Of a stretch of 64,000 bases of DNA, positions 1-16,600 are shown piece by piece (position 1 is the first letter of the stretch; each line of letters begins with the position of its first letter). The DNA comes from Chrysemys picta bellii. Lineage: Eukaryota. The stretch spans positions 1,860,001 to 1,924,000 of the forward strand of contig NC_088801.1 of NCBI RefSeq assembly GCF_011386835.1. Direction: 5' to 3'. Both the position numbers and the translations under genes were made by a program. The notes beneath the pieces are model-generated. The model was given only the letters and a program-made list of their open reading frames with translations. It was not told the DNA's origin and did not search any database.

Positions 1-197
1 AGGGACAGGGCAGCCCCTGGTGTCGGTGCCCCAGACTTGTACCAGCCGTGGCCCCGCATGTTGGAGGTTGGGGCCACCCCCCCCCGACATGCCCAAGGGG
101 CAGCTCCAAGGTGGGCATGGGCCTGCACCGTGTGCATCTCTTGTGGGGCTTGGTGCCACCTCCCCCGCGGCGCTGCCCCCCCGCCCCGCGGACCCAC

Positions 198-3100
198 CTG
201 CAGGAGGTGCTGCAGCAGGCACTGGTCGGGCTGCAGCCGAGCCCAGAACTCGCTGAAGGCCGAGCCCCGGGCGAAGTCAGAGCCCCGCTGGCCGCTCACC
301 AGCACCACGTTCCCGTGCCGCCCGGATGCCAGCAGCTTCTTGGCCAGCGGGCCCGGGTAGCTCTGGTCGAGGAAGAGGAAGACCCTGCGGGCGCTGCAGC
401 CCTCCAAGTCGGCCAGGAGCTCGGCCACAGGGTAGCGCTCCTTGGGGTCGGCCTGCGGGGGGGGGCAGAGTGTGCCCGTCAGTGCCCTTCCCCCGCCTGC
501 TCACAGCACAGAGGGGAGGGCCCCCCCCCCCAAACACCAGCTGCATGGAGACTCCAGGCAGGAGATCAAGGGAATTCCAGCAGCCCAGCACTTGAAAGGG
601 GGGAATGGGGGGGGGTTTCCCACCCACCCAGCGCAGATGAAAGCGCCAAGCCGGGGCCTTTGAAGTGCAGCAGATCAGAGGCAAGGGGGGAGGGCAGCGA
701 GCTCACCTCCACCTGGAGATCAATGGGGGGGCACCTGGTTCTCTCAGCCCCGCCGCGGGGGGCAGCCAGCTGCCGTGGGAGACGCCCAGAGCCACGGAGT
801 CACCCCACATCCCCTGGCTGCAGAGAGACCCACTGCCCCAGGGAGCCAGGCGAGGGCACAGCCTGGCAGTGGGGGCCGGGAACCCAGCTGAGGGGTGCCC
901 GCACAGCGCCCCACTCACGATGCCGTTCTTGTTGGTGTCCCACAGGAGCATGGTGCCGTCGCTCCAGGTGGGGCTGTTCAGGTAAAGCACCAGCGAGTCG
1001 GCGCAGTGCCGCGTGCGGCACACCAGCGCCAGGTGGCTGCGGATCACCAGCTTCTCCGTGGCTGGATACACGTCGCCCACCTCCGCGGCCACTGGGGGCA
1101 GAGGGCACAGACACCCGTCAGTGAGGCCTCGGGCAGCGCCCGCCCAGAGCCTCCGCCCCGTCCCCCCGGCTTCCTGGGCCTCCCCCAGCCACCTCCTGCC
1201 TGTCGCTACAGGCCCAACCCTGTCACCACACCCTGCATCATGCCTCTGGCCTGGTCTCCTCTCTGCCCATATCCCCGCCCAGCCCCCTGTGCTCATCCCC
1301 CTGCGCCTGGTACTGCCCCACCTCGCCCCTGCCCTGCGGGGCTGAATGGGGGAGGGAGAAGGCTGGTGCCAACTGCAGGAGAGGGGGAGGGGCTGTGCCA
1401 ATCAGTGCCCTAAGCCTTGAGTCACTTGGGCCCAGTCCACGGGGTCTCCACCCCACACCTGGAGGCAGCGCAGAGACCCGGCGTCGGGACCAGCGCTGGT
1501 GCCCAAAGCCCCAGTTAGCCCCTGCTGGAGGGGTCGGGGGGCGACTCACAGGAGTTCCCCATGGCCTGGTACCCCCCCCCGGGGAGTCACTCGAGCCCCC
1601 AGCCGCCCCCGGGGCCGCAGGCCCTGACCTGGCGCCTGGCCATCGCCCGCGAAGAAGGCCTTGATGTGCTCCTGCCGGAAGCCGTTCCGCCGCAGCATCT
1701 GGGCGAAGAGCCGCAGGTTGCGGGCGTGGTGGGGGTAGGTGATCTGGTCCTGCCAGCCGCCTGGGGGGGGGCACAGCGTTAAGGGCAGCATGGGGCTCGG
1801 CCGGCTGGGCAGGGAGGGGGCACCAAGGCCAGTGTGTCTGCAGCCCTAAGGGAGGGGCCAGAGCCTGGCAGCACCCACCAATGGGATGTGGGGGAGGCAC
1901 CATGCCACTCGGGCTCTGATGGGGCACCCAGCTCCCAGCAGCAGGACTCGGCCCCTCAGCGCCAGGAGAGGGCAAGGGCAACCCCCGTTCAGCCCCAGGA
2001 AAGCCAGAGCCCGGGGCAAGCCGCCCTCCAGCATGGCCAGGGGGTGAGCCCCCACTCAGCCTCGCGGCCTGGAGACACCCCAGCCCAACCCACTTCCCCC
2101 AGGGCCCTCAGCTGGGAAATGCCTTTAACCCCCAGTCTATGGGGCTGGAGCCAAACTGACGGCCCCGTGTCCCATTCCCCGACCCCCTGAGCCAGCCAGT
2201 CCCCTGCCCTGGGGCCGGGTCAGAGCCAGCGCCCCCTAGAGGGGAAGGAGCGTGTCCCATCCCCCACCCTGGGGCACACCTGAGAGGAGCACGGCGTGGT
2301 CACAGGTCTGGTACATGCGGCAGGACTTGTGGGCGGGCAGCTGCTGCCGGTGGCACCGGCGGGTGTTCTTGTCCAGCTCGCAGCGAGCGGCCATGGGGCT
2401 GGGGCTGACCACGGGGAGCGGCTGCGGACACGGGCCGAATCCCGGCAGCTCTGCCAGGAAAAGCAACAGGTGATATGTGGTAGGACTGGCAGACAGACAG
2501 AGGGGGGCAGGGCCCACAGACAGACAGACAGAGGTGGAGTGGGGCCCACAGACAGATGGGGCAGGGCCCACAGACAGTCAGACAGAGGCGGGGTGGGGCA
2601 CACAGACAGACAAAGGCGGGGTGGGGCACACAGACAGACGGAGGCGGGGCGAGACCGACAGACAGAGGTGGGGTGGGGCACACAGACAGACAGAGGTGGG
2701 GTGGGGCCCACAGACAGATGGGGGCAGGGCCCACAGACAGACAGACAGAGGCGGGGTGGGGTACACAGACAGACAGACGGAGGCAGGGCGGGACCCACAG
2801 ACAGACAGACAGAGGTGGGGTGGGGCACACAGACAGACGGAGGCGGGGTGGGGCACACAGACAGACAAACAGAGGCAGGGTGGGGCACACAGACAGACAG
2901 ACAGACAGAGGCGGGGCAGGACTGACAGACAGACAGAGGCGGAGTGGAGCCCACAGACAGATGGGGGCAGGGCCCACAGACAGACAGATGGAGGCGGGGT
3001 GGGGCACACAGACAGACAGACTGAGGTGGGGCGGGACCCACAGACAGACAGACTGAGGCGGGGCGGGACCCACAGACAGAGGCGGGGTGGGGCACACAGA

Positions 3101-6100
3101 CAGACAGACGGAGGCGGGGCAAGACCGACAGACAGAGGCGGGGTGGGGCACACAGACAGACAGAGGTGGGGCACACAGACAGACAGAGGTGGGGCGGGAC
3201 AGACAGACAGACAGACGGAGGCGGGGTGGGGCACACAGACAGACAGACGGAGGCGGGGCGGGGCACACAGACAGAGGTGGGGTGGGGCACACAGACAGAC
3301 AGAGGCGGAGTGGGGCCCACAGACAGACAGAGGCGGGGCGGGACAGACAGACAGATGGAGGCGGGGTGGGGCACACAGACAGACAGACGGGGGCGGGGCA
3401 CCCGCAGGCTCATGACAGCTGCCATGGCTGAGTGAGAATGGGGCAGAGGAGTGATGGGGGCAGAGCGCCGGGGTGCCCAGGGAACAGCCTCCTGCACTAG
3501 CAGGGCGGGGCCAGTCCCGGAGGGCCCGGGAAGACGGGGGCCAGTCAGCTGCGGGCAAGGCCCCGGGCCGGTAACCCCGGGTGGGCCCCAGCCCCAGCGG
3601 CCATTCCCTGGCCGAGGAGTGGAGCTGAGCCCTGGTCTCCGGGTGCCAGAGCTGCCCCTCGGTGCCGCCCCCCGGGGTCCCCGCGCACCCACCTACGCAG
3701 TGCAGCCTCTGCTGGCGCTTGGGGTCCTGCGCCGCCACCACCAAGGGCAGGAAGTGAATCTCACAGACCCCCACCAGCGGCTCCTCCCGGCGGGCGCGCC
3801 CAGCCTCGGCGGCCTCCCGCGTGCCCTGCCCGCCGCGCCCTCGCCGCTTCGTCTGGTTCTCGCAGCGGCTCCGCAGGGCCAGGGTCAGGCACTCGTAGCT
3901 GCCTGTGGGGCGAGCAGACGCTGTGGGGGCCGGTCTGAGCACGCCAGGACGGGGAGCCAGAGCTCAGGGACACGGTGACCCACGCGGCCAGAGCCCGGGA
4001 CGCATCGCGCCAGTCACGGTGTGGGGCAGAACCGGCCACTTCACACCTAGTGCTGCAGAGCGCCCCCAACTGAGCCCCCGGCCCGCTCCCCGCACCCCCT
4101 AGCGCCCCCCACGGGCACTGGGGCCAGCCCTGACTGCCAGGGGAGAGCCCCCACCCGCTCCCCATGCACAGCGCCCCCTAGCGCCCCCCACGGGCACTGG
4201 GGCCAGCCCTGACTGCCAGGGGAGAGCCCCCGACCGCTCCCTGCGCACAGCGCCCCCTAGAGCCTCTCACGGGCACTGCGGCCAGCCCTGACTGCCAGGG
4301 GAGAGCCCCCACCCGCTCCCCATGTACAGCGCCCCCTAGCGCCCCCCACGGGCACTGGGGCCAGCCCTGACTGCCAGGGGAGAGCCCCCACCCGCTCCCC
4401 ATGCACAGCGCCCCCTAGCGCCCCCCACGGGCACTGGGGCCAGCCCTGACTGCCAGGGGAGAGCCCGCCCCATCGCTGCGCACAGCGCCCCCTAGCACCC
4501 CCCACCGGCACTGGGGCCAGCCCTGACTGCCAGGGGAGAGCCCCCACCCGCTCCCCATGCACAGCGCCCCCTAGTGCTCCCCACGGGCACTGGGGCCGGC
4601 CCTGACTGCCAGGGGAGAGCCCCCTACTGAGCCCCCACCCGCTCCCCATGCACAGCGCCCCCTAGCGCCCCCCACGGGCACTGCGCCAGCCCTGACTGCC
4701 AGGGGAGAGCCCGCCCCATCGCTGCGCACAGCGCCCCCTAGTGCTCCCCACGGGCACTGGGGCCAGCCCTGTCTGCCAGGGGAGAGCCCCCACCCGCTCC
4801 CCATGCACAGCGCCCCCTAGCGCCTCTCCCGGGCACTGCGCCAGTCCTGACTGCCAGGGGAGAGCCCGCCCCATCGCTGCGCACAGCGCCCCCTAGCGCC
4901 CCCCACGGGCACTGGGGCCAGCCCTGTCTGCCGGGGGAGAGCCCCCGACCGCTCCCTGCGCACAGCGCTCCCTAGCGCCCCCCACGGGCACTGGGGACAG
5001 CCCTGACTGCCAGGGGAGAGCCCGCCCCATCGCTGCGCACAGCGCCCCCTAGTGCTCCCCACGGGCACTGGGGCCAGCCCTGACTGCCAGGGGAGAGCCC
5101 GCCCCATCGCTGCGCACAGCGCCCCCTAGCGCCCCCCCACGGGCACTGGGGACAGCCCTGACTGCCAGGGGAGAGCCCCAACCCGCTCCCCATGCACAGC
5201 ACCCCCTAGCGCCGCCCACGGGCACTGGGGCCGGCCCTGACTGCCAGGGGAGAGCCCCCTACTAACACAGCGCCCCCTAGCGCCGCCCACGGGCACTGGG
5301 GCCGGCCCTGTCTGCCGGGGAGACCCCCCCCAAGCCCCAGGGGGAGGCAGCCGCCGCAGGTTGCGCACCCCCCGCCCCTGGCCGGACCCGGCTCCCAGGG
5401 CAGGACACGGGGCCATGTCTCGCCTTGGCCCCAGCCCCTCCGCAGACGCCGGGGCTGCGGAGCCGGGACCTGTCCAGGCGGGCCGGGGGCAGGCGCAGCC
5501 TCCGGGGTCCGGCTGCCCCACGCCAGACAGGCGGGGTAAGGGGGCTGCGCCGGCGGCTCTAGCGACCCTCCAATCCCCGGGGCCACTTACTGGAGCCGGG
5601 GCGCGCCCGCCATCTGCCCCATCGCTCCGAGACTGGGGGAGAGAAGAGGCCGCGGGCGCTGCCGGGACGGAGGGGACCGGACCGGACCAGGCCGGGCTCC
5701 GGGGCACGAGGGGGGCTGTGGCGGGGACCGGGGGCGGACGCGGGCCAGGCCGGGCTCGGAAGGGGACGGGGAGCGGGGCTCGGGGGCACGAGGGGGGCCT
5801 GGGACCGGGGGCGGACGGGGAGCGGGGCACAGAGGGGACATAGGGGCGGGGACCGGGGGCGGACGAGCTCGGGGCGGGGAGCGGGGCTCGGGGGCACGAG
5901 GGGAGGGGGACCGGGGGCGGACGGGGAGCGGGGCACAGAGGGGACATAGGGGCTGGGCCGGGGGCGGACGGGGAGCGGGGCACAGAGGGGACATAGGGGC
6001 TGGGCCGGGGGCGGACGGGGACCGGGGCACAGAGGGGACATAGGGGCTGGGGCGGGTACCGGGGGCAGACGGGGAGCGGGGCACAGAGGGGACATAGGGG

Positions 6101-6767
6101 CTGGGCCGGGGGCGGACGGGGAGCGGGGCACAGAGGGGACATAGGGCCGGGGGCGGACGGGGAGCGGGGCACAGAGGGGACATAGGGGCTGGGCCGGGGG
6201 CGGACGGGGAGCGGGGCACAGAGGGGACGTAGGGGCTGGGCCGGGGGCGGACGGGGAGCGGGGCACAGAGGGGACATAGGGGCTGGGCCGGGGGCGGACG
6301 GGGACCGGGGCACAGAGGGGACAGAGGGGCGGGGACCGGGGCGGCCGCGGGCCGGCCGGGCGCTCACCCAGGTAGACGCGGTCCGGGCCCCGGCAGCGCC
6401 GCGGGCTGACGCCGAAGTCCAGGTGGAAGAGCCGCAGCGGGTGGCCGAAGCTCGCCCCGGGGCTGGGGTCCAGCAGCAGCAGCGCGTCGTGCGCGGGGGG
6501 CGCCCCGGGGCCGCCCCGGGGGGCGCCGCTGGCCGCGGCCGAGCCGTCGGGGAGCAGCGCCCGCAGCTTGTGGCCGGGCCGGGCGGGCTCCGACACGTAG
6601 AGCGCGGGGCACTCGGGCTGGGGGCCGCCCCGCGGGGCGCACGGAGCCGCCTGCAGGTGCCGCAGGGCGGCCGCCCCCCAGCGCCGCAGCCGGGGCTGGG
6701 CGAAGCGGCCGGAGCCGCCCAGGGGCTGCGGCAGGGCGGCCAGGAGCAGCAGCAGCAGAGGGGCCAT
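198..6767 (-). CDS. Uncharacterised secreted protein with a C-terminal peptidase C13/legumain-like (clan CD) domain, predicted catalytically dead; 3' end unresolved
   Basis: Hand-spliced exons 6767-6368, 3902-3693, 2450-2280, 1760-1629, 1091-919, 452-198. All are GT-AG with phases 1,1,1,1,0,0 and give 447 stop-free codons. Starts MAPLLLLLLAALPQPLGG (signal-peptide-like). Later motifs HAVLLSGG, YPHHARN, LRRNGFRQEHI, DSLVLYLNSP, RRVFLFLDQSYPG, NVVLVSG, FSEFW fall in the same order as the legumain core motifs. No stop codon located; the last exon(s) may lie near or beyond base 1. Confidence 0.8.
2483..3405. repeat. Complex micro/minisatellite of (ACAG)n blocks alternating with GGGGTGGGGC/GGCGGGGC blocks
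   Basis: Recurring cagacagacaga and gaggcggggtggggcaca units in intron 2 of the unnamed gene. Explains the TDRQ/SVCL low-complexity ORFs. Confidence 0.95.
4085..5330. repeat. ~79-bp minisatellite, about 16 copies, each with a CTCF-like motif
   Basis: The CCCCTAG anchor recurs near 4100, 4179, 4258, 4337, 4416, 4493, 4572, 4663, 4739, 4818, 4894, 4973, 5050, 5127, 5207 and 5278. Confidence 0.95.
5780..6340. repeat. ~47-bp G-rich minisatellite
   Basis: Unit ggggcacagaggggacataggggctgggccgggggcggacggggagc repeated in intron 1 of the unnamed gene. Confidence 0.95.
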
Positions 6768-7084: not shown

Positions 7085-7745
7085 GGAGGGGGGGGAGCCC
7101 AGGGCTGGTGTGGGAGGAGATGGGGGGGAGAGCCCAAGGCTGGGGCAGCAGGGGGCTCGGGGGGCAGGGAGGAGAGCCCAAGGCTGGGGCGGCAGGGGGT
7201 GCAGGTGGGGGATAGCCCAGGGCTGGGGCAGGTGGGGGGGCAGGTGGGGGTGAGCCCAGAGCTGGGGCGGGAGGGGGTGCGGATGAGGGGACAGCCCAGG
7301 GCTGGGGCAGGAGGGTGTGCGGATGGGGGGTGAGGGGACAGCCCAGGGCTGGGGCGGTGGGGGGTGCAGATGGCGGTGAGCCCAGGGCTGGGGCGGTGGG
7401 GGGTGCGGATGAGGGGACAGCCCAGGGCTGGGGCAGGAGGGGGTGCAGGTGGGGGACAGCCCAGGGCTGGGGCAGGTGGGGGTGCAGGTGGGCGGGAGCC
7501 CAGGGCTGGGGCAGCAGGGGGTGCAGGAGGGGGTGCGGATGGGGGGTGAGGGGACAGCCCAGGGCTGGGGCAGGAGGGGGTGCAGGTGGGGGTGCGGATG
7601 GGGGGTGAGGGGACAGCCCAGGGCTGGGGCAGGAGGGGGTGCAGGTGGGGATAGCCCAGGGCTGGGGCAGGTGGGGGTGCAGGGGGGGACAGCCCAGGGC
7701 TGGGGCAGGAGGGGGTGCAGGGGGGGACAGCCCAGGGTGCGGGTG
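7085..7745. repeat. G-rich minisatellite (agcccagggctggggcaggagggggtgca-type unit)
   Basis: Many degenerate copies of cagcccagggctggggc just upstream of the unnamed gene's ATG. Confidence 0.9.
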
Positions 7746-10690: not shown

Positions 10691-13600
10691 CTAGAACATG
10701 CTGCAGTCTGATGGCCTCGAACTCCGGCTCTGGGCCTGTAATGTGAACACACCAGGAGTGAGCAAGCGCCCCCCTGCCCCGCCCCCCCGCAGCACTCAGG
10801 GGCCTCCAGGGCAGGGATGGGGCAGACTGGCGAAACCGGCCTGGGGTTGCTGCAGTCATCCCAGGCCTCGCCCCAGCAGGGCTGAGCCCTCCCCTTGGAG
10901 CTGGCAGGGGCTCGGCTCCCCTAGCCCGTGGGGTCTCTGCACTGCGGGAGGTCAGGCCGCCCCCGGGGACAGTCCTGCCTCGGCTCACGTCAGCCTGGGA
11001 ACGGGGGTGCAGAGCTCCAGCCCCCGGTGCCGAGGAGTGGGGAAGAACCTGGTGAGAGCCGGGCCTCAGCACGGAGCCTCCAGCAGCTCAACTCAGCTCA
11101 CCTGCTGCTGCTGCCGCCTCTGGTACTCCTCCTCGCTCGCAGCAAGCGCCCGCGCCAAGGCCAGGTCCTCCTCCTCCTGCGCGCTGCTGGAGACAGCCTT
11201 GTTCAGGGCCGGGAGACCCCGCAGCCCAGCCGCCCCAGGGACAGCTCCCAGCAGCGGGGTACTGAGCCCAGCGAGGCTGGGGGCGCCTTGGGGACTTGGG
11301 GAGCCAGGCTGCAGGCGTCCCAGCTGGGACGGAGCCAGGAGAACCAGGCCGAGGCCTGTCCCAGAGACACCCCTCTCCCCCCACATACAGAACCCCTGGA
11401 ACCGGGCTCAAGAGGGCGCCACCTGCTGGACTGCACCACTCCCTGCAGCAGCCTGGCCCTTCCCAGTCTATTCCTGCCTATTCGTTGGCAAGATGCGAAG
11501 GGATCACAGCCCAGGCCAGTTAACGCACCTCGGCCCCTCCCCAGCCAGTCCCCTTCCGGGACAGGCCCCCACAATGGTGCCCTGTGCAGGCTCGTGGGGT
11601 GCGGTTCTCAGGTGAATGTCAGCGTGTCACATGCCCTACCCAGCACGCCCTGCTGCGCCAGCCCCGTACCGTACCTGAGCGCCCGTGCCGAGCCGGGCAC
11701 CGATTCTGCCAGGGACATCTCCAGGGCTCGCTGCAGTGCCTCCTCTTCGCTCTGAAACGAGAGTGGGGTGTGCCCACGGCACTGCCCGGCTTAGCCACCC
11801 CCTGGAGAGAGGGCAGGACCAAGCCCAGAGGTCACGTTGCGGGGGGGCAGTCCTACCCTGACCCCCAGCCATGGGGGGGGGGGTCTGGCCCCCTCCCACC
11901 CTAGGCCCAGCTGTAGGCCGGGGAGTCGGACACGGTCAGAGGGAAGGCGCCCGGATTCAGAGCCTCCCCCGCAGGGAACAGGCTCACCGAGCAGCTCCTG
12001 GCGCCCCTCTGGCCTGTGGCAAGGGGCTGCTGCTGTCGCACGGCTCCACGTTCACACAGCAGAGCGAGGGAGGCTCCAGCAGAGGCCAGGCCTGCCCTGG
12101 CTCTCACGTGCAGGCTCTGTCATAGGGTCACTGAGCCCATCGCCGAGCGCCAGCCCAGGCGTCCTGGGGAGCGCTGGGCCTGGTCCTGCCATGTAGGAGG
12201 TGGGTGACGGAGCTGGCTCCAGAACAGGGCTCCTGTGCCTGGCTCTCTGCCCCCTCTGGCGGGTACCTCACACTCAGGGTGTACAGCCGGGGAGCGAGGG
12301 CACCCGGTTCGCCGTGCCAGGGCACCCACTGGGCAAGGTTCGCGCCGGGCCACTCACCAGTCCATTCTGCAGCGCAACGGCTGGGGGCGAGGTGCTGCTG
12401 GGCTGCCGTGCCGCCATCACGCCGCCTCTGGGTGCAAGAGGAGGAGCAGGGTTAGTGCTAGCACGCGGAGCAGCTCGGGGGGCCAACACCCAGGCAGGGA
12501 GACACACACCCCGGCTCCGTGCCCCTCCCAGCAGGCCAAAGGGGTGTGCCAGCCCCCCAGGGTGGGCGGGGCAGATTTCGACACACCGGCTCTCTGGAGG
12601 GGCTGCTGGGTCTAGCCACCCGAGCCAGGCCCTGGGGGCGAGAGGAGGGGTCGGCATCATCCTACCTGCTTGGGGCTGGAGCAGGGGGGCTGGCTGCCGG
12701 CCTGGAAGCTCCTCTGCTTGACGTCCCGGCTGCCACAGAGGAGGATGCCTGGGCTCTCGCGACCGCAGCATGTCTGCGACAGACACCGTCCGTCAGTAAC
12801 AGCTTCCCCTGAGGCCCCCCCCCCAGCAGAGCCCTCTGTCTCTGCATCCCTGGAGGTCCCCCGCCCCTCCCTCGGGTACTCAGCCCCAGCTGTGTGCCCT
12901 GAATCCTTCCTGCTGTCCTGTGTGCTCCCTCACCCCCTGCTCTCTGTGCAGTCACTCAGTGCCACGCGCCCCTCGGGCAGACCCGCTACGAACAGCAGGA
13001 GCGGCGGACGTGCTAGCGGCTTGCACCGCAGACCAGCGTCAAGGGATGGGGCACTTACTCCTCTGTACCTTGCGGCTGCAGCCCTGCAAGGGGGTCGCCT
13101 GGCACCAGAACGCAGACCCAGCCAGCGCGGCGCGGGGTGTGTGGAGCCGGGGCGCCCGGGGCAGACCCAGCCGGCGCGGGGCGGGGTGTGTGGAGCCGGG
13201 GCGCCCGGGGCAGACCCAGCCGGCGCGGCGCGGGGCGGGGTGTGTGGAGCCGGGGCGCCCGGAGCAGACCCAGCCGGCGTGGGGTGCGTGTGTGGAACCA
13301 GGGCACCCGGAGCAGACCCAGCCGGCACAGGGCAGGGTCCGTGTGTGGAGCCGGGGCGCCCGGGGCAGACCCAGCCGGCGCGGGGCGGGGTGGGGGGTGG
13401 AGCTGGGGCGTCTGGGGCAGACCCAGCCGGCGCAGGGCGGGGTGTGTGTGTGGAGCCGGGGCGCCCGGAGCAGACCCAGCCGGGGCGGGGGGCGTGGAGC
13501 CGGGGCGTCCGGGGCAGACCCAGCTGGCGCGGGGCGGGGCGGGGGGTGGAGCTGGGGTGCCCAGAGCAGGCCCAGCCAGCATGGAAGAGGCGGGTATGTG

Positions 13601-16600
13601 GGGGGGGGGGGGGGAGCTGGGACACGAGGCAGCGTGAGCGCAGATTATGCAGTTCTCCTGTCATCACCACTGTGGCGGGCATGGCTCTGCCCTGGCGAAG
13701 CACTTCCCCCCCCCACCACCGTCCGTTACCCGGCTCTGGAGAGGGGGCGCCCCACCCCATTGCAGTCGTGATCCAGGGGGTGCCGGTGCTTGAGGCAGAA
13801 GTTCCCGTGGCACTGGTCACAGATCACCTTCATCATCTCCCTCTGCTTGCAGCCAGGCTTCAGACACTTATTGGTGAAAATCTAACCAGAGACAAGGCAC
13901 CCGGTGAGCAGCTGTGAGCTCGCGGCCGTCCCCGACCGGCACGGAGCAGCCCAGCAGCAGAGTCCGGCCCCACTATGGGGTCACTACGCGGCCGGAGCCC
14001 TGGCAACGTACGTTCCAGGAGCTCCAACGCCAGCAGCAAGGCTGGGTCAGACCCCAGGTCTCCGAGTCCCAGCTCCAGCCCCCAGCCCCCAGCCACGCTG
14101 CTCTCTGGGGAATTCAGATCTAGCGCCAGGGTGGCTGGCAGAGACCAAGTGCTGCAGCACGAAGGGGCTTTGCCAGCTTGTAGATTCACGGGGGTAAGGC
14201 CGGAAGAGCTCACTTTGCCCCCCTCATCTGACCTGCGTGGCACAGGCCAGAGCGCCGCACGCTGGCACTCCCACAGCGAGGACCTGTCCTCTCCTATGCC
14301 GTACGGGGCACTACAGAGCGCAGCAGCTTGTGGCTGAATTGGGGTGGGTCCAGGCTCCTGTCACGGCCTCCAAGGGACGGTGGTTCCCATGGCAAATCGC
14401 CCCCCCGGGGGGAAAGTTGCTACTTCAAAACAAGATGCACTTTAGCTTCCATTAGATTTTGTGACGCCTCCCTCAGTTCCTCTCACAGCAGCAGCACCCC
14501 AGGCCCTGCTGTTCCAGGCCTGGGCTCCCTGCACCCAGCTCTCCTGGTATCCCCCAATCCCAACCCACAGCCCCCCACAGCTATTCCAGGCCTGGACACT
14601 GCCTGCCCCCCCCTCCTGATTTCCAGCCCCCAGCATTTCCATCCAGACCGTGCTGCAACCTGCTACTCATGTGGTTCAGCCCAATGCCCACTGGGGAGTC
14701 AGCGGAGAACAGCAGACTTGGCTCAATGCGCCCGGGCAGCATCGGCGAGTGCCAACCGGAGACCCCCCCTCCAAGCCCCGGAGGCACAGGCCCCTAGGCC
14801 AGGCGGAAGCGAGGTCGCAGCCTCCTACCTTGCGCTTGCGCTGGGCGGGGTCGGATTTGCAGTCTCGGTCGATGTGCTGCCCCACCACCACATCAGGCAT
14901 CTCCCCCTTTCGGACAGGGATGGGGATGTTGCAGAGGGGCACACGGGGACCTGCACGTCCTGTAACACAGCAGAGGCCAGGCTGAACACGCTCCCCAGGC
15001 CTGTCTGGGCCGTGCCGTTCGCCCCAGGGGCAGGAGCTGCCTTGCAGATGATGGTTCTCTCGTGATATTTTCTAACCCTTCGGATTATTTCTGCCTTTGC
15101 TAAGCAAGCAGTCTGGGGGCCCAGGCACACCCTGGGAACGCTGGCAGCTTGTGCTCGGGGCCAGGGAAAGAACAGGTGTTAAAGTGCAAAGGACGGTTCT
15201 GACCATCCTGAGCCCCTGCACACCACAGGCCACAGAACCGCACCCAGCCACGTGAGCGGAGCTAGGACGGAGCCTGCAGAGCAGCTGCCAGGCTTGGGTT
15301 AAAGCCGCTACCCCGTCCCTTGTGAACCGCAGCTCAGGCCTGGGCTGCATGGAGGAGTGACACTAAACGCCCAGGGTGTACAAACCCAGAGCCAAACACC
15401 GCAGCCACATCGCCCGAGGGAGCTCCAGCGAGGTCAAGGAAAGAATGCTGTGGGGGGGGGAATGGAAAACCCCTTCCGCTGCTGGATGCTGCCTCTACTC
15501 TCTAGGGTCACAGCTAAACCCCACAGCTTTACGGGTCACGCCCCCGGCCTGAGACCAGCGCCCCCCCGGAGCCCCTCTGCTGAGTGTGGCCTCGTGGGCA
15601 GCGCTCTGAGCCAAGCCCGTGCGAATTAGTTCGGCAGAGATGACGTGGCCACGTGCACTAGCCCTGCTGTGATCCCTCCGTCCCCGAGCGTTGGGGTTCT
15701 AGAAACCGTTCAGCTGGCCTGGCAGACGTCGCCACCTCGTGTTCTCCACCCCACCGCTGGGCTTGGCTGCGGGAGGATCGCCACAAGGATTCCAGGGCCG
15801 CCCAGTGCCCTACTGTCACTGGCCATGCTCGCCTCGCTCTCGGGCTAGCCAGACAGAGCTACACCTCAGGCAGCCCCATGGCTCCACCTGCCCCTCTCGT
15901 CCCAGGCTTAACTTGCACATGTGGGGTCTGATCCTGAGGTTTCGCCGGGAGCTGCCAGGTAGTCCCAACTCCGCTGGGAGCACGGTGCTAGGAGCCACCC
16001 CCAGCCACCGCTCCCCACTTACCTTCTTGTAGGCAGAGGTGCACTGGTGCTGGGTGTAGGTGATGTGGTCGGTGCAGAATATCTGCTCGCACGCGTCGCA
16101 CTTCAGAGGGAGAAAGTCTGGCAAGACAGGAGAGACAGCAGGCAGGTGAGGGGCCAAGGAGTCGGCGCTTCCCACTGCACAGCCCAGGGGCCAGCCCAGC
16201 CACGCACTGCCTGGGACAGCCAGCCTGCAGGGGCACAGGGCTGCAGCAACTGACAGACTGAGCCATTCCAGACTACCGCTCCCAGCATGCACCGCTGCAG
16301 CTTAAAAACAAACCCCACCTTTATGGCCTACGCAAAACGTTTGTAGCTTTTCAAATTTGTTTAATTGATCCGGAGTATTTCCTAGCAAGCCAAAGGGACC
16401 GCTTCTTCAGGGATGCCAAGGACTCAACCCCGAAACAGTCACCACGGTAGGAGAGACAGCAAGAGACTCTTGACAACGAGGGTTTGTAACCTCAGTGCCC
16501 GCCCTTCCCCTCCCCATGAGGAGACTAATGATGCCAGTCACTGAAATCCGAAGGGGGAACCGACCGAAGAGAAGCAGCAATGGGATCTGCAGGTCTCTGT

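What the first reader, a model, noticed from the sequence alone, without database searches (positions are those of the whole stretch)
360..975. Both catalytic dyad positions are Ser: a predicted pseudo-protease
Known: clan CD proteases use His in (D/S)HG after one core strand and Cys in (E/D/Q)AC or DQC after a later strand. Seen: the equivalent positions read LN-S-P (Ser codon 975-973) and LDQ-S-YPG (Ser codon 362-360), while the flanking strands are intact. Inference: the fold is kept but proteolysis is lost, as in cFLIP-type pseudo-caspases. Possible roles are a secreted substrate-binding decoy, a cystatin sink or a scaffold. A less likely alternative is a re-engineered Ser nucleophile.
Basis: partly seen in the sequence, partly recalled or inferred. 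Interest (0 to 1): 0.82.

Follow-up and report, generated by a model that had tools for sequence, protein, structure and literature searches.

The report
Ancient secreted legumain-fold protein without catalytic dyad
This turtle gene encodes a secreted protein that keeps the three-dimensional fold of the protease legumain but lacks its catalytic cysteine and histidine. It belongs to an unnamed family conserved from molluscs to reptiles that also carries a predicted calcium-binding loop next to the dead active site.

Summary
They lie in a spliced, transcribed gene of at least 7 exons. Its product matches Chrysemys picta LOC135974104 (P0082, 512 aa) exactly over five exons and through …LLQ of the sixth.

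The His148 position is resolved only to ±1 residue. It is Ser344 or, more likely by my reading, the invariant Pro345. No His and no following Gly are present either way, so the cysteine-protease machinery is gone.

Instead, N-S-P and D-Q-S are conserved in 135 and 142 of 146 members, from vertebrates to amphioxus, molluscs and arthropods. The loss is therefore ancient.

New here: a 12-residue EF-hand-like Dx[DN]x[DN]G…E loop sits in the loop that normally carries the His, with its metal-ligand positions conserved in 145-146 of 146 sequences. The N-terminal domain has no known fold.

Most likely this is a secreted, non-proteolytic, possibly Ca2+-binding pseudo-legumain. Its function is untested.

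The parts
6368..6767 (-). Exon 1. ATG at 6767-6765. Encodes a signal-peptide-like N-terminus (MAPLLLLLLAALPQPLGGSG) and most of the N-terminal domain, including the invariant DPSPGASFGH hairpin (P0082 aa 1-134).
   Evidence: donor G|gtgagc read at 6367-6366
3693..3902 (-). Exon 2 (aa 134-204). Cys-rich end of the N-terminal domain (CLTLALRSRCEN...CEIHFLP).
   Evidence: tblastn 100% identity to P0082 134-203; ORF text
2280..2450 (-). Exon 3 (aa 204-261). Cys-rich linker and strand b1 (CDHAVLLSG) of the legumain-like domain.
   Evidence: RNA joint 1759|2279
1629..1760 (-). Exon 4 (aa 261-305). GGW, helix a1 and strand b2. His271-His272 (codons 1731-1726) align with legumain Arg44-His45.
   Evidence: RNA joints 1091|1629 and 1759|2279
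919..1091 (-). Exon 5 (aa 305-362). Helix a2, strand b3 (ADSLVLYLN), the N-S-P motif and the first seven residues of the EF-hand-like loop.
970..978 (-). Asn343-Ser344-Pro345, the start of loop L3 where clan CD proteases carry His-Gly. Pro345 (972-970) is invariant and is my preferred equivalent of His148.
198..452 (-). Exon 6 (aa 363-447). End of the EF-like loop, helix a3, strand b4, D-Q-S-Y-P-G, helix a4, H-x-N-V strand b5 and the variable loop L5. The gene continues off the left edge of the window (about 65 aa missing).
360..368 (-). Asp391-Gln392-Ser393. Ser393 (362-360) occupies the position of legumain Cys189, and Asp391 that of Glu187.
   Evidence: hhalign; motif counts; DSSP
919..939 (-). 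First part of the EF-hand-like loop: Asp356-Thr-Asn358-Lys-Asn360-Gly361-Ile362 (loop positions 1-7).
438..452 (-). Second part of the EF-hand-like loop: Ala363-Asp364-Pro-Lys-Glu367 (loop positions 8-12). The loop is split by the intron 453-918.

Best explanation
The finding lies in a real, expressed gene for a secreted (or ER/Golgi-lumenal) soluble two-domain glycoprotein. It has a signal peptide, no transmembrane segment, 18 Cys and a conserved NVT sequon.

The C-terminal domain (about aa 247-500) has the legumain/GPI8 (clan CD, family C13-like) alpha/beta fold. The nucleophile Cys is replaced by Ser393. The His-Gly pair on loop L3 is replaced by Asn-Ser-Pro-Thr. By a non-significant local alignment (E about 1), Tyr269 falls at the place of the third triad residue, Asn42.

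The general base is absent. The protein therefore cannot work as a cysteine protease or transamidase, and most likely does not cleave peptide bonds at all.

The former active-site loops are the most conserved part of the domain. This argues that the site is still used, most plausibly to bind a ligand or partner.

Inside loop L3 the family has acquired a 12-residue loop, D-x-[ND]-x-[ND]-G-x-A-[DESN]-x-x-E, that meets the sequence rules of EF-hand/Dx[DN]xDG calcium sites. I infer that the site binds Ca2+ and that Ca2+ shapes or stabilises the pseudo-active site.

Shown: gene structure, transcription, fold, absence of the dyad, conservation pattern, purifying selection. Inferred: no proteolysis, Ca2+ binding, ligand binding.
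For: Gene and expression. The exons match P0082 at 100%. Spliced contigs occur in four runs from four studies.

Dyad. The nucleophile position is S in 142 and N in 4 of 146 members, never C. The L3 motif is NSP in 135 of 146. hhalign pairs DQSYPG with EACESG.

Conservation. Entropy is 0.38 for 343-346 and 0.66 for 391-396, against a domain mean of 1.44. Pro345, Asp356, Gly361 and Glu367 are invariant in the 42- and 71-sequence alignments.

EF-like loop. Position 1 is D in 146/146, position 3 N/D in 146/146, position 5 N/D in 146/146, position 6 G in 145/146, position 9 D/E/S/N in 146/146 and position 12 E in 146/146, while positions 2, 4 and 10 vary. These are the rules given for Dx[DN]xDG sites in PMC3123361.

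Selection. dN/dS is 0.32 against Mauremys (p = 3e-4) and 0.49 against Dermochelys (p = 2e-3).

Secretion. The only hydrophobic peak is at the N-terminus.
Against: No biochemical data exist, and no paper mentions the zebrafish symbol.

Near-invariance of Ser393 and its neighbours would also fit a catalytic Ser.

Residue-level equivalence to His148 is unresolved.

The EF-like loop is not a canonical EF-hand. It is preceded by a strand, has Ala at position 8, and Pfam EF-hand models touch only 1 of 71 members weakly. Most vertebrates have Asn rather than Asp at positions 3 and 5, which lowers the expected Ca2+ affinity.

Whether the loop faces the former active site could not be checked without coordinates.

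dN/dS of 0.3-0.5 within turtles indicates only moderate constraint.
Confidence: 0.68

Rival explanations
1. Ser393 is a working nucleophile. The family would then be a serine hydrolase or transferase built on the clan CD scaffold, with a base supplied from elsewhere. Candidate bases are the invariant His109 of the N-terminal FGH hairpin, His272, or, in trichinellid nematodes, the His in I-H-G-P and D-H-S.
For: Ser393 is kept in 142 of 146 members, and the L3 and L4 loops are the most conserved parts of the domain. Asp/Glu391 is kept at the position of legumain Glu187. Trichinellids carry extra His residues in both motifs. His109 is invariant in the N-terminal domain.
Against: Four arachnid-type members have Asn instead of Ser. 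No conserved His or Lys lies on L3 or L4 outside trichinellids. I know of no Ser-nucleophile enzyme with this fold (from memory). The domain-domain docking test gave no verdict.
Confidence: 0.15
2. The alignment is wrong. Other His and Cys residues of the protein sit at the dyad positions, and the protein is an ordinary active C13 peptidase.
For: The protein has 18 Cys and several conserved His (His255, His272, His408). Sequence similarity to C13 is too weak for a confident residue alignment in the His region.
Against: By the model's secondary structure, the domain's conserved Cys (247, 253, 329, 334, 381) lie just before strands b1, b3 and b4, and His408 just before b5. That is the end of the strand opposite to loops L3 and L4, which carry the dyad in all clan CD enzymes (PMC4357240). 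The loops after b3 and b4 contain no Cys or His in 134 of 146 members.
Confidence: 0.03
3. The Ser residues are a species-specific change, an assembly error, or belong to a decaying pseudogene.
For: dN/dS of 0.3-0.5 among turtles is higher than for many housekeeping genes. The family was not seen in mammals, birds or amphibians among the hits listed.
Against: The same residues occur in 130-140 sequences from sharks to molluscs. The reading frame is intact and spliced transcripts exist. dN/dS is significantly below 1.
Confidence: 0.01

Closest known systems
Legumain / asparaginyl endopeptidase (MEROPS family C13, clan CD)
   Different: No Cys189, no His148-Gly149 and no Asn42. No C-terminal LSAM prodomain; instead there is an N-terminal beta-rich domain of unknown fold and a short conserved Cys-containing tail (GAPC...GCQNLPT.LW). 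It has an extra EF-hand-like loop in L3, a hypervariable L5 loop, and falls below the Pfam PF01650 threshold.
PIGK / GPI8, catalytic subunit of GPI transamidase (family C13)
   Different: PIGK keeps the His/Cys dyad and has a C-terminal transmembrane helix. This protein has neither. No evidence links it to GPI anchoring. The GPI-related names attached to two database entries (PIG-X in AFDB, GPI inositol-deacylase in UniRef) are not backed by any Pfam hit.
Pseudo-caspases such as cFLIP (family C14 pseudoenzymes)
   Same: A clan CD fold that is retained while the catalytic Cys is lost.
   Different: cFLIP is a recent vertebrate paralogue that acts by pairing with active caspase-8. This family is of C13 type, extracellular or lumenal, at least as old as bilaterians (with a possible placozoan member in AFDB), and shows no evidence of pairing with an active paralogue.
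Ca2+-dependent clan CD enzymes (metacaspases) and Dx[DN]xDG calcium loops
   Different: From memory, metacaspases bind Ca2+ through scattered Asp residues, not through a contiguous EF-like loop, and they are active Cys proteases. Here the loop is a family-specific insertion, and Ca2+ binding is only predicted.

Membership tests
Peptidase family C13 (legumain/GPI8), clan CD | Caspase-haemoglobinase alpha/beta fold with a central six-stranded sheet | tested here: met
Peptidase family C13 (legumain/GPI8), clan CD | Match to Pfam PF01650 above the gathering score (22.8 bits) | tested here: not met
   The window's protein gives no hit. The best member shown with a bit score is P0023 at 21.3 bits. 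18 of 71 members hit below or near threshold, best E 6.9e-6.
Peptidase family C13 (legumain/GPI8), clan CD | Nucleophile Cys on loop L4 after strand b4 (E-A-C) | tested here: not met
   Ser393. Across 146 members the position is S in 142, N in 4 and C in 0.
Peptidase family C13 (legumain/GPI8), clan CD | Catalytic His followed by Gly on loop L3 after strand b3 | tested here: not met
   N-S-P-T follows b3. There is no His in 134 of 146 members. Trichinellids have H-G-P or H-A-P with the His at the Asn343 column.
Peptidase family C13 (legumain/GPI8), clan CD | Asn-specific S1 pocket (Arg44, His45, Ser216, Asp231; PMC4357240) | tested here: inconclusive
   R/H-H aligns with Arg44-His45 only in a non-significant local HMMER alignment (E about 1). 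The L5 region is hypervariable and shortened in teleosts.
cFLIP-type pseudo-caspase | Inactive paralogue that heterodimerises with an active caspase through strand b6 | not tested
   No partner is known. The family is C13-like rather than C14, and legumain acts as a monomer (PMC4357240).
Dx[DN]xDG / EF-hand-like calcium-binding loop | Asp at position 1, D/N/S/T at position 3, D/N at position 5, Gly at position 6 | tested here: met
   146/146, 146/146, 146/146 and 145/146. The criteria are from PMC3123361.
Dx[DN]xDG / EF-hand-like calcium-binding loop | An additional acidic ligand later in the sequence (position 12 Glu in EF-hands) | tested here: met
   Glu367 is present in 146/146 members and lies at the start of a helix in the model.
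Dx[DN]xDG / EF-hand-like calcium-binding loop | Characteristic loop conformation with bound Ca2+ | not testable with these tools
   No coordinates are returned by the structure tools. No experimental structure exists.
Canonical EF-hand (helix-loop-helix) | Entering helix, hydrophobic residue at position 8, match to Pfam EF-hand models | tested here: not met
   The loop is preceded by strand residues 352-355. Position 8 is Ala in 131 of 146 members. EF-hand_1/5/6 models hit 1 of 71 members at E 0.15-0.29.

The most novel reading that the evidence does not exclude
The family is not dead but repurposed. A Ca2+-gated site would be built from Ser393, Asp/Glu391, Asn343-Ser344 and the EF-like loop. 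It might be completed in cis by the invariant Phe-Gly-His hairpin (His109) of the N-terminal domain, whose fold is unknown. The result would be a new Ser/His-type hydrolase or transferase, or a Ca2+-dependent ligand receptor, on a clan CD scaffold.
Probability: 0.1. Interest if true: 0.85.

Novelty: new variant of a known kind. Interest (0 to 1): 0.6.

Why it matters
Pseudo-proteases of clan CD are known from the caspase side (cFLIP and the like). I found no described C13-type pseudoenzyme family. These proteins carry no Pfam domain, no informative name and no literature hit.

The family is conserved from molluscs and amphioxus to reptiles, with a possible placozoan member. It was not seen in mammals or birds, although its neighbours ZFAND2B and ABCB6 are present there. 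This makes it a clean case for asking what a protease fold does once catalysis is given up.

The strongly conserved former active-site loops and the EF-hand-like insertion give two sharp, cheap experiments: Ca2+ binding and probe labelling. Zebrafish offers a genetic model.

Tried and rejected
Searches that found nothing useful:
- Pfam on single exons gave nothing.
- phmmer of exon 6 against the PDB gave nothing relevant.
- Family profiles against PDB sequences gave only non-significant local hits to plant asparaginyl ligases at the b1-a1-b2 region (E 1.2-1.6).
- A literature search for the zebrafish symbol found no paper. Searches for legumain pseudo-proteases found nothing on this family.

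Attempts to resolve the His region:
- hhalign of the family against a single legumain fragment was uninformative.
- hhalign against a 35-sequence legumain alignment was reliable only around the Cys motif.
- Forced or trimmed alignments of the His region gave mutually inconsistent registers: b3 matched to b2, b3 matched to b4, or the His-Gly pair deleted. I do not use them.

Domain docking:
- Complex prediction on the N-terminal domain against the C-terminal domain gave no verdict (score 0.04). The N-terminal domain folded poorly without an alignment. This is no evidence either way.

N-terminal domain fold:
- The top AFDB entry is named 'PIG-X' at 35% identity. It is probably a misnamed family member, because no member of the N-domain alignment hits the PIG-X Pfam model.

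A first dN/dS run used two wrong reading frames and was discarded. The corrected run is.
Full report
**The observation.** On the minus strand, window 1092-919 translates to VAAEVGDVYPATEKLVIRSHLALVCRTRHCADSLVLYLNSPTWSDGTMLLWDTNKNGI. Window 452-198 translates to ADPKERYPVAELLADLEGCSARRVFLFLDQSYPG….

**Gene model.** The two stretches are exons of a multi-exon gene on the minus strand. The exons are 6767-6368 (ATG at 6767), 3902-3693, 2450-2280, 1760-1629, 1091-919 and 452-198. At least one further exon lies beyond the left edge of the window.

The exon translations are 100% identical, up to …LLQ, to P0082. This is 'uncharacterized protein LOC135974104 isoform X2' of Chrysemys picta bellii, 512 aa.

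**Transcription.** Contigs of four public runs, from four studies and four coded organisms, were laid on window 150-2460. They skip 452-917, 1092-1628 and 1760-2278, with GT..AG ends on the minus strand. The gene is therefore transcribed and spliced as modelled. One run also carries a joint 1091→2280 that skips exon 4.

**Family.** An exhaustive HMMER search with exon 6 found 72 relatives. A word-indexed search with a lizard orthologue found 162. Named members are all 'uncharacterized', 'hypothetical' or, in fishes, 'si:ch211-67e16.11'.

Members come from:
- squamates and turtles;
- lungfish, bowfin, gar, sturgeon, teleosts, sharks and rays;
- amphioxus;
- a chiton, octopus, snails and a brachiopod;
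- a mayfly, a scorpion and a spider;
- trichinellid nematodes.

AlphaFold DB clusters add entries that appear to be a water flea, a flatworm and a placozoan, all unnamed. No mammal, bird or amphibian appeared among the rows listed. Only the best rows are shown, so I could not test absence.

In turtles the gene lies between a ZFAND2B-like gene (window 14900-11671, same strand) and an ABCB6-like gene.

**Fold.** No Pfam model reaches threshold on the window's protein. PF01650 (Peptidase_C13) is nevertheless the only family that recurs among members: 18 of 71, best E 6.9e-6. Language-model features of exon 6 point to bacterial C13 clusters at 0.93.

An AlphaFold2 model of P0082 195-512, built with a 71-sequence alignment, has mean pLDDT 79.9 and pTM 0.81. 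Foldseek's best solved matches are human legumain (E 6e-6), PIGK, MALT1 and caspase-7.

The clan CD fold, nearest to family C13, is well supported.

**The Cys position.** In clan CD enzymes the dyad sits on the loops that follow strands b3 and b4 (PMC4357240). In the model, b4 is RVFLFL (385-390). It is followed by Asp391-Gln392-Ser393-Tyr-Pro, and helix a4 starts at Gly396.

I obtained real legumain sequences by baiting the protein database with a 60-residue legumain stretch. The hits carry PF01650. Profile-profile alignment of the family against 35 of them pairs L-F-L-D-Q-S-Y-P-G with F-Y-M-E-A-C-E-S-G, and Asn410 with the N-V start of b5. The overall score is weak (E 0.085), but this block is the confident part.

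Ser393 therefore occupies the Cys189 position and Asp391 the Glu187 position. Among 146 family sequences this position is Ser in 142, Asn in 4 (arachnid-type sequences) and never Cys.

**The His position.** Strand b3 is ADSLVLYLN (335-343). Ser344 and Pro345 are in coil, and Thr346 forms an isolated bridge. I could not obtain coordinates, and the profile alignments of this region contradict one another. Residue-level equivalence is therefore inferred only.

Two arguments favour Pro345:
- Matching the five-residue hydrophobic runs (legumain V-F-[IV]-Y-F then T-D-H-G; family L-V-L-Y-L then N-S-P-T) places Asp147 on Ser344, His148 on Pro345 and Gly149 on Thr346.
- The isolated bridge at Thr346 fits the small L3 strand that carries the Gly after His in caspases (PMC4357240).

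The motif-level conclusion does not depend on the register. There is no His and no His-Gly pair. In mine, the Pro replaces the His itself.

The motif is N-S-P in 135 of 146 sequences. Pro345 is present in every motif variant recorded among the 146 and is invariant in the 42- and 71-sequence alignments. Eleven trichinellid sequences read H-G-P or H-A-P, and their other motif reads D-H-S or D-Y-S. I cannot explain this variant.

In a weak local alignment (E about 1), legumain Arg44-His45 pair with His271-His272 (Arg-His in fishes). Asn42 then pairs with Tyr269.

**Could other His or Cys residues serve?** The conserved Cys of the domain (247, 253, 329, 334, 381) lie just before strands b1, b3 and b4, and His408 lies just before b5. 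That is the edge of the sheet opposite to the active-site loops. With 18 Cys and a signal peptide, they are most simply disulfide partners.

**Conservation pattern.** That is not what is seen: the N-S-P and D-Q-S state is shared by vertebrates, amphioxus, molluscs, a brachiopod and arthropods. It therefore predates the bilaterian radiation.

The former active-site loops are the most conserved part of the domain. Column entropy is 0.38 for 343-346 and 0.66 for 391-396, against a mean of 1.44. The L5 region, which supplies Ser216 and Asp231 of legumain's S1 pocket (PMC4357240), is the most variable at 2.79 and is shortened in teleosts.

Within turtles, dN/dS is 0.32 against Mauremys and 0.49 against Dermochelys. 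Both are significantly below 1 (p = 3e-4 and 2e-3), but constraint is only moderate.

**A new feature.** Relative to legumain, the family has about nine extra residues in L3. They form D356-T-N358-K-N360-G361-I-A363-D364-P-K-E367, split by the intron between exons 5 and 6.

Across 146 sequences:
- position 1 is Asp in all;
- position 3 is Asn or Asp in all;
- position 5 is Asn or Asp in all;
- position 6 is Gly in 145;
- position 9 is Asp, Glu, Ser or Asn in all;
- position 12 is Glu in all;
- positions 2, 4 and 10 vary freely.

Amphioxus reads DKDGDGQASKSE and the scorpion DADGDGKVDPDE. This is the ligand pattern of EF-hand and other Dx[DN]xDG calcium sites, including the rule that a further acidic ligand follows the motif (PMC3123361).

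It is not a canonical EF-hand. A strand precedes it, position 8 is Ala, and Pfam EF-hand models touch one member weakly. I infer a Ca2+ site in the loop that carries the catalytic His in true proteases. This is a prediction, not a result.

A test of whether this domain docks on the legumain-like domain gave no verdict. There is no transmembrane segment. There are two N-glycosylation sequons, and the NVT sequon is conserved.

Three corrections apply:
- The His equivalent is probably the invariant Pro345, not Ser344.
- The state is ancient and family-wide rather than vertebrate-specific.
- The legumain-type S1 pocket is not conserved, which weakens the decoy and cystatin-sink ideas.

The best reading is a secreted, non-proteolytic pseudo-legumain whose conserved former active site, flanked by a predicted Ca2+ loop, binds something still unknown (confidence about 0.68). 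A repurposed Ser nucleophile remains possible (about 0.15).

The family appears undescribed. I rate it a new variant of a known kind, with interest 0.6.

Noticed in passing
window 2490-3401, 4095-5331, 5911-6344 and 7124-7737: GC-rich minisatellites lie in introns 2 and 1 and upstream of the gene. Their sizes are 28-32 bp x about 32 copies, 79 bp x about 16, 47 bp x about 9 and 39 bp x about 14. They create long spurious ORFs on both strands.
   Followed up: partly
window 2161-2255 (intron 3): A short element reaches very high depth in all four RNA-type runs (up to about 3,500 against 20-75 for the exons). It has many loose ends and back-joints, so it is a high-copy interspersed repeat transcribed from many loci.
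   Followed up: no
window joint 1091->2280: One run (X1) carries a contig that skips exon 4 (132 nt, in frame). The product would lack helix a1 and strand b2 of the legumain-like domain. Depth is 19 against 44 for the full form.
   Followed up: no
window 11671-14900, minus strand; L002 1-444; L001 8709-9368: A ZFAND2B-like gene (AN1 zinc fingers, UIM-like EEEALQRALEMSLAE) lies directly upstream on the same strand. In Dermochelys an ABCB6-like gene flanks the other side. One lizard annotation (P0008) wrongly fuses the ZFAND2B-like gene with this gene.
   Followed up: partly
P0057, P0052, P0060 and relatives (Trichinella, Soboliphyme, Trichuris): Trichinellid nematodes replace N-S-P with H-G-P or H-A-P plus a 3-4-residue insertion, and replace D-Q-S with D-H-S or D-Y-S. 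This puts His residues next to both former dyad positions. Trichinella entries are fused to a La-protein gene model.
   Followed up: partly
window 185-200: RNA contigs align down to 185, not 198. After ...LLQ, P0082 reads A-G-P-R where the window read-through gives V-G-P-R. Either the next exon begins with a near-copy of the intron start, or the donor is a GC site at 184-183. The canonical GT at 197-196 is my preferred donor.
   Followed up: partly
window 966 (codon 966-964): Trp347, two residues after Pro345, is specific to the window. All four runs and the other turtle proteins read Arg, which corresponds to A>G at 966 on the plus strand.
   Followed up: no
P0082 93-125 (window about 6491-6393, minus strand): The N-terminal domain has an invariant hairpin, L-D-P-x-P-x-x-x-F-G-H. 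It has no detectable relative in the PDB, in Pfam, or outside its own family in AlphaFold DB.
   Followed up: partly
teleost members such as P0094/P0166, P0104/P0189 and P0107/P0175: Several teleosts carry two paralogues. Many teleost copies read V-E-Q-S instead of V-D-Q-S and have a shortened L5 loop.
   Followed up: no
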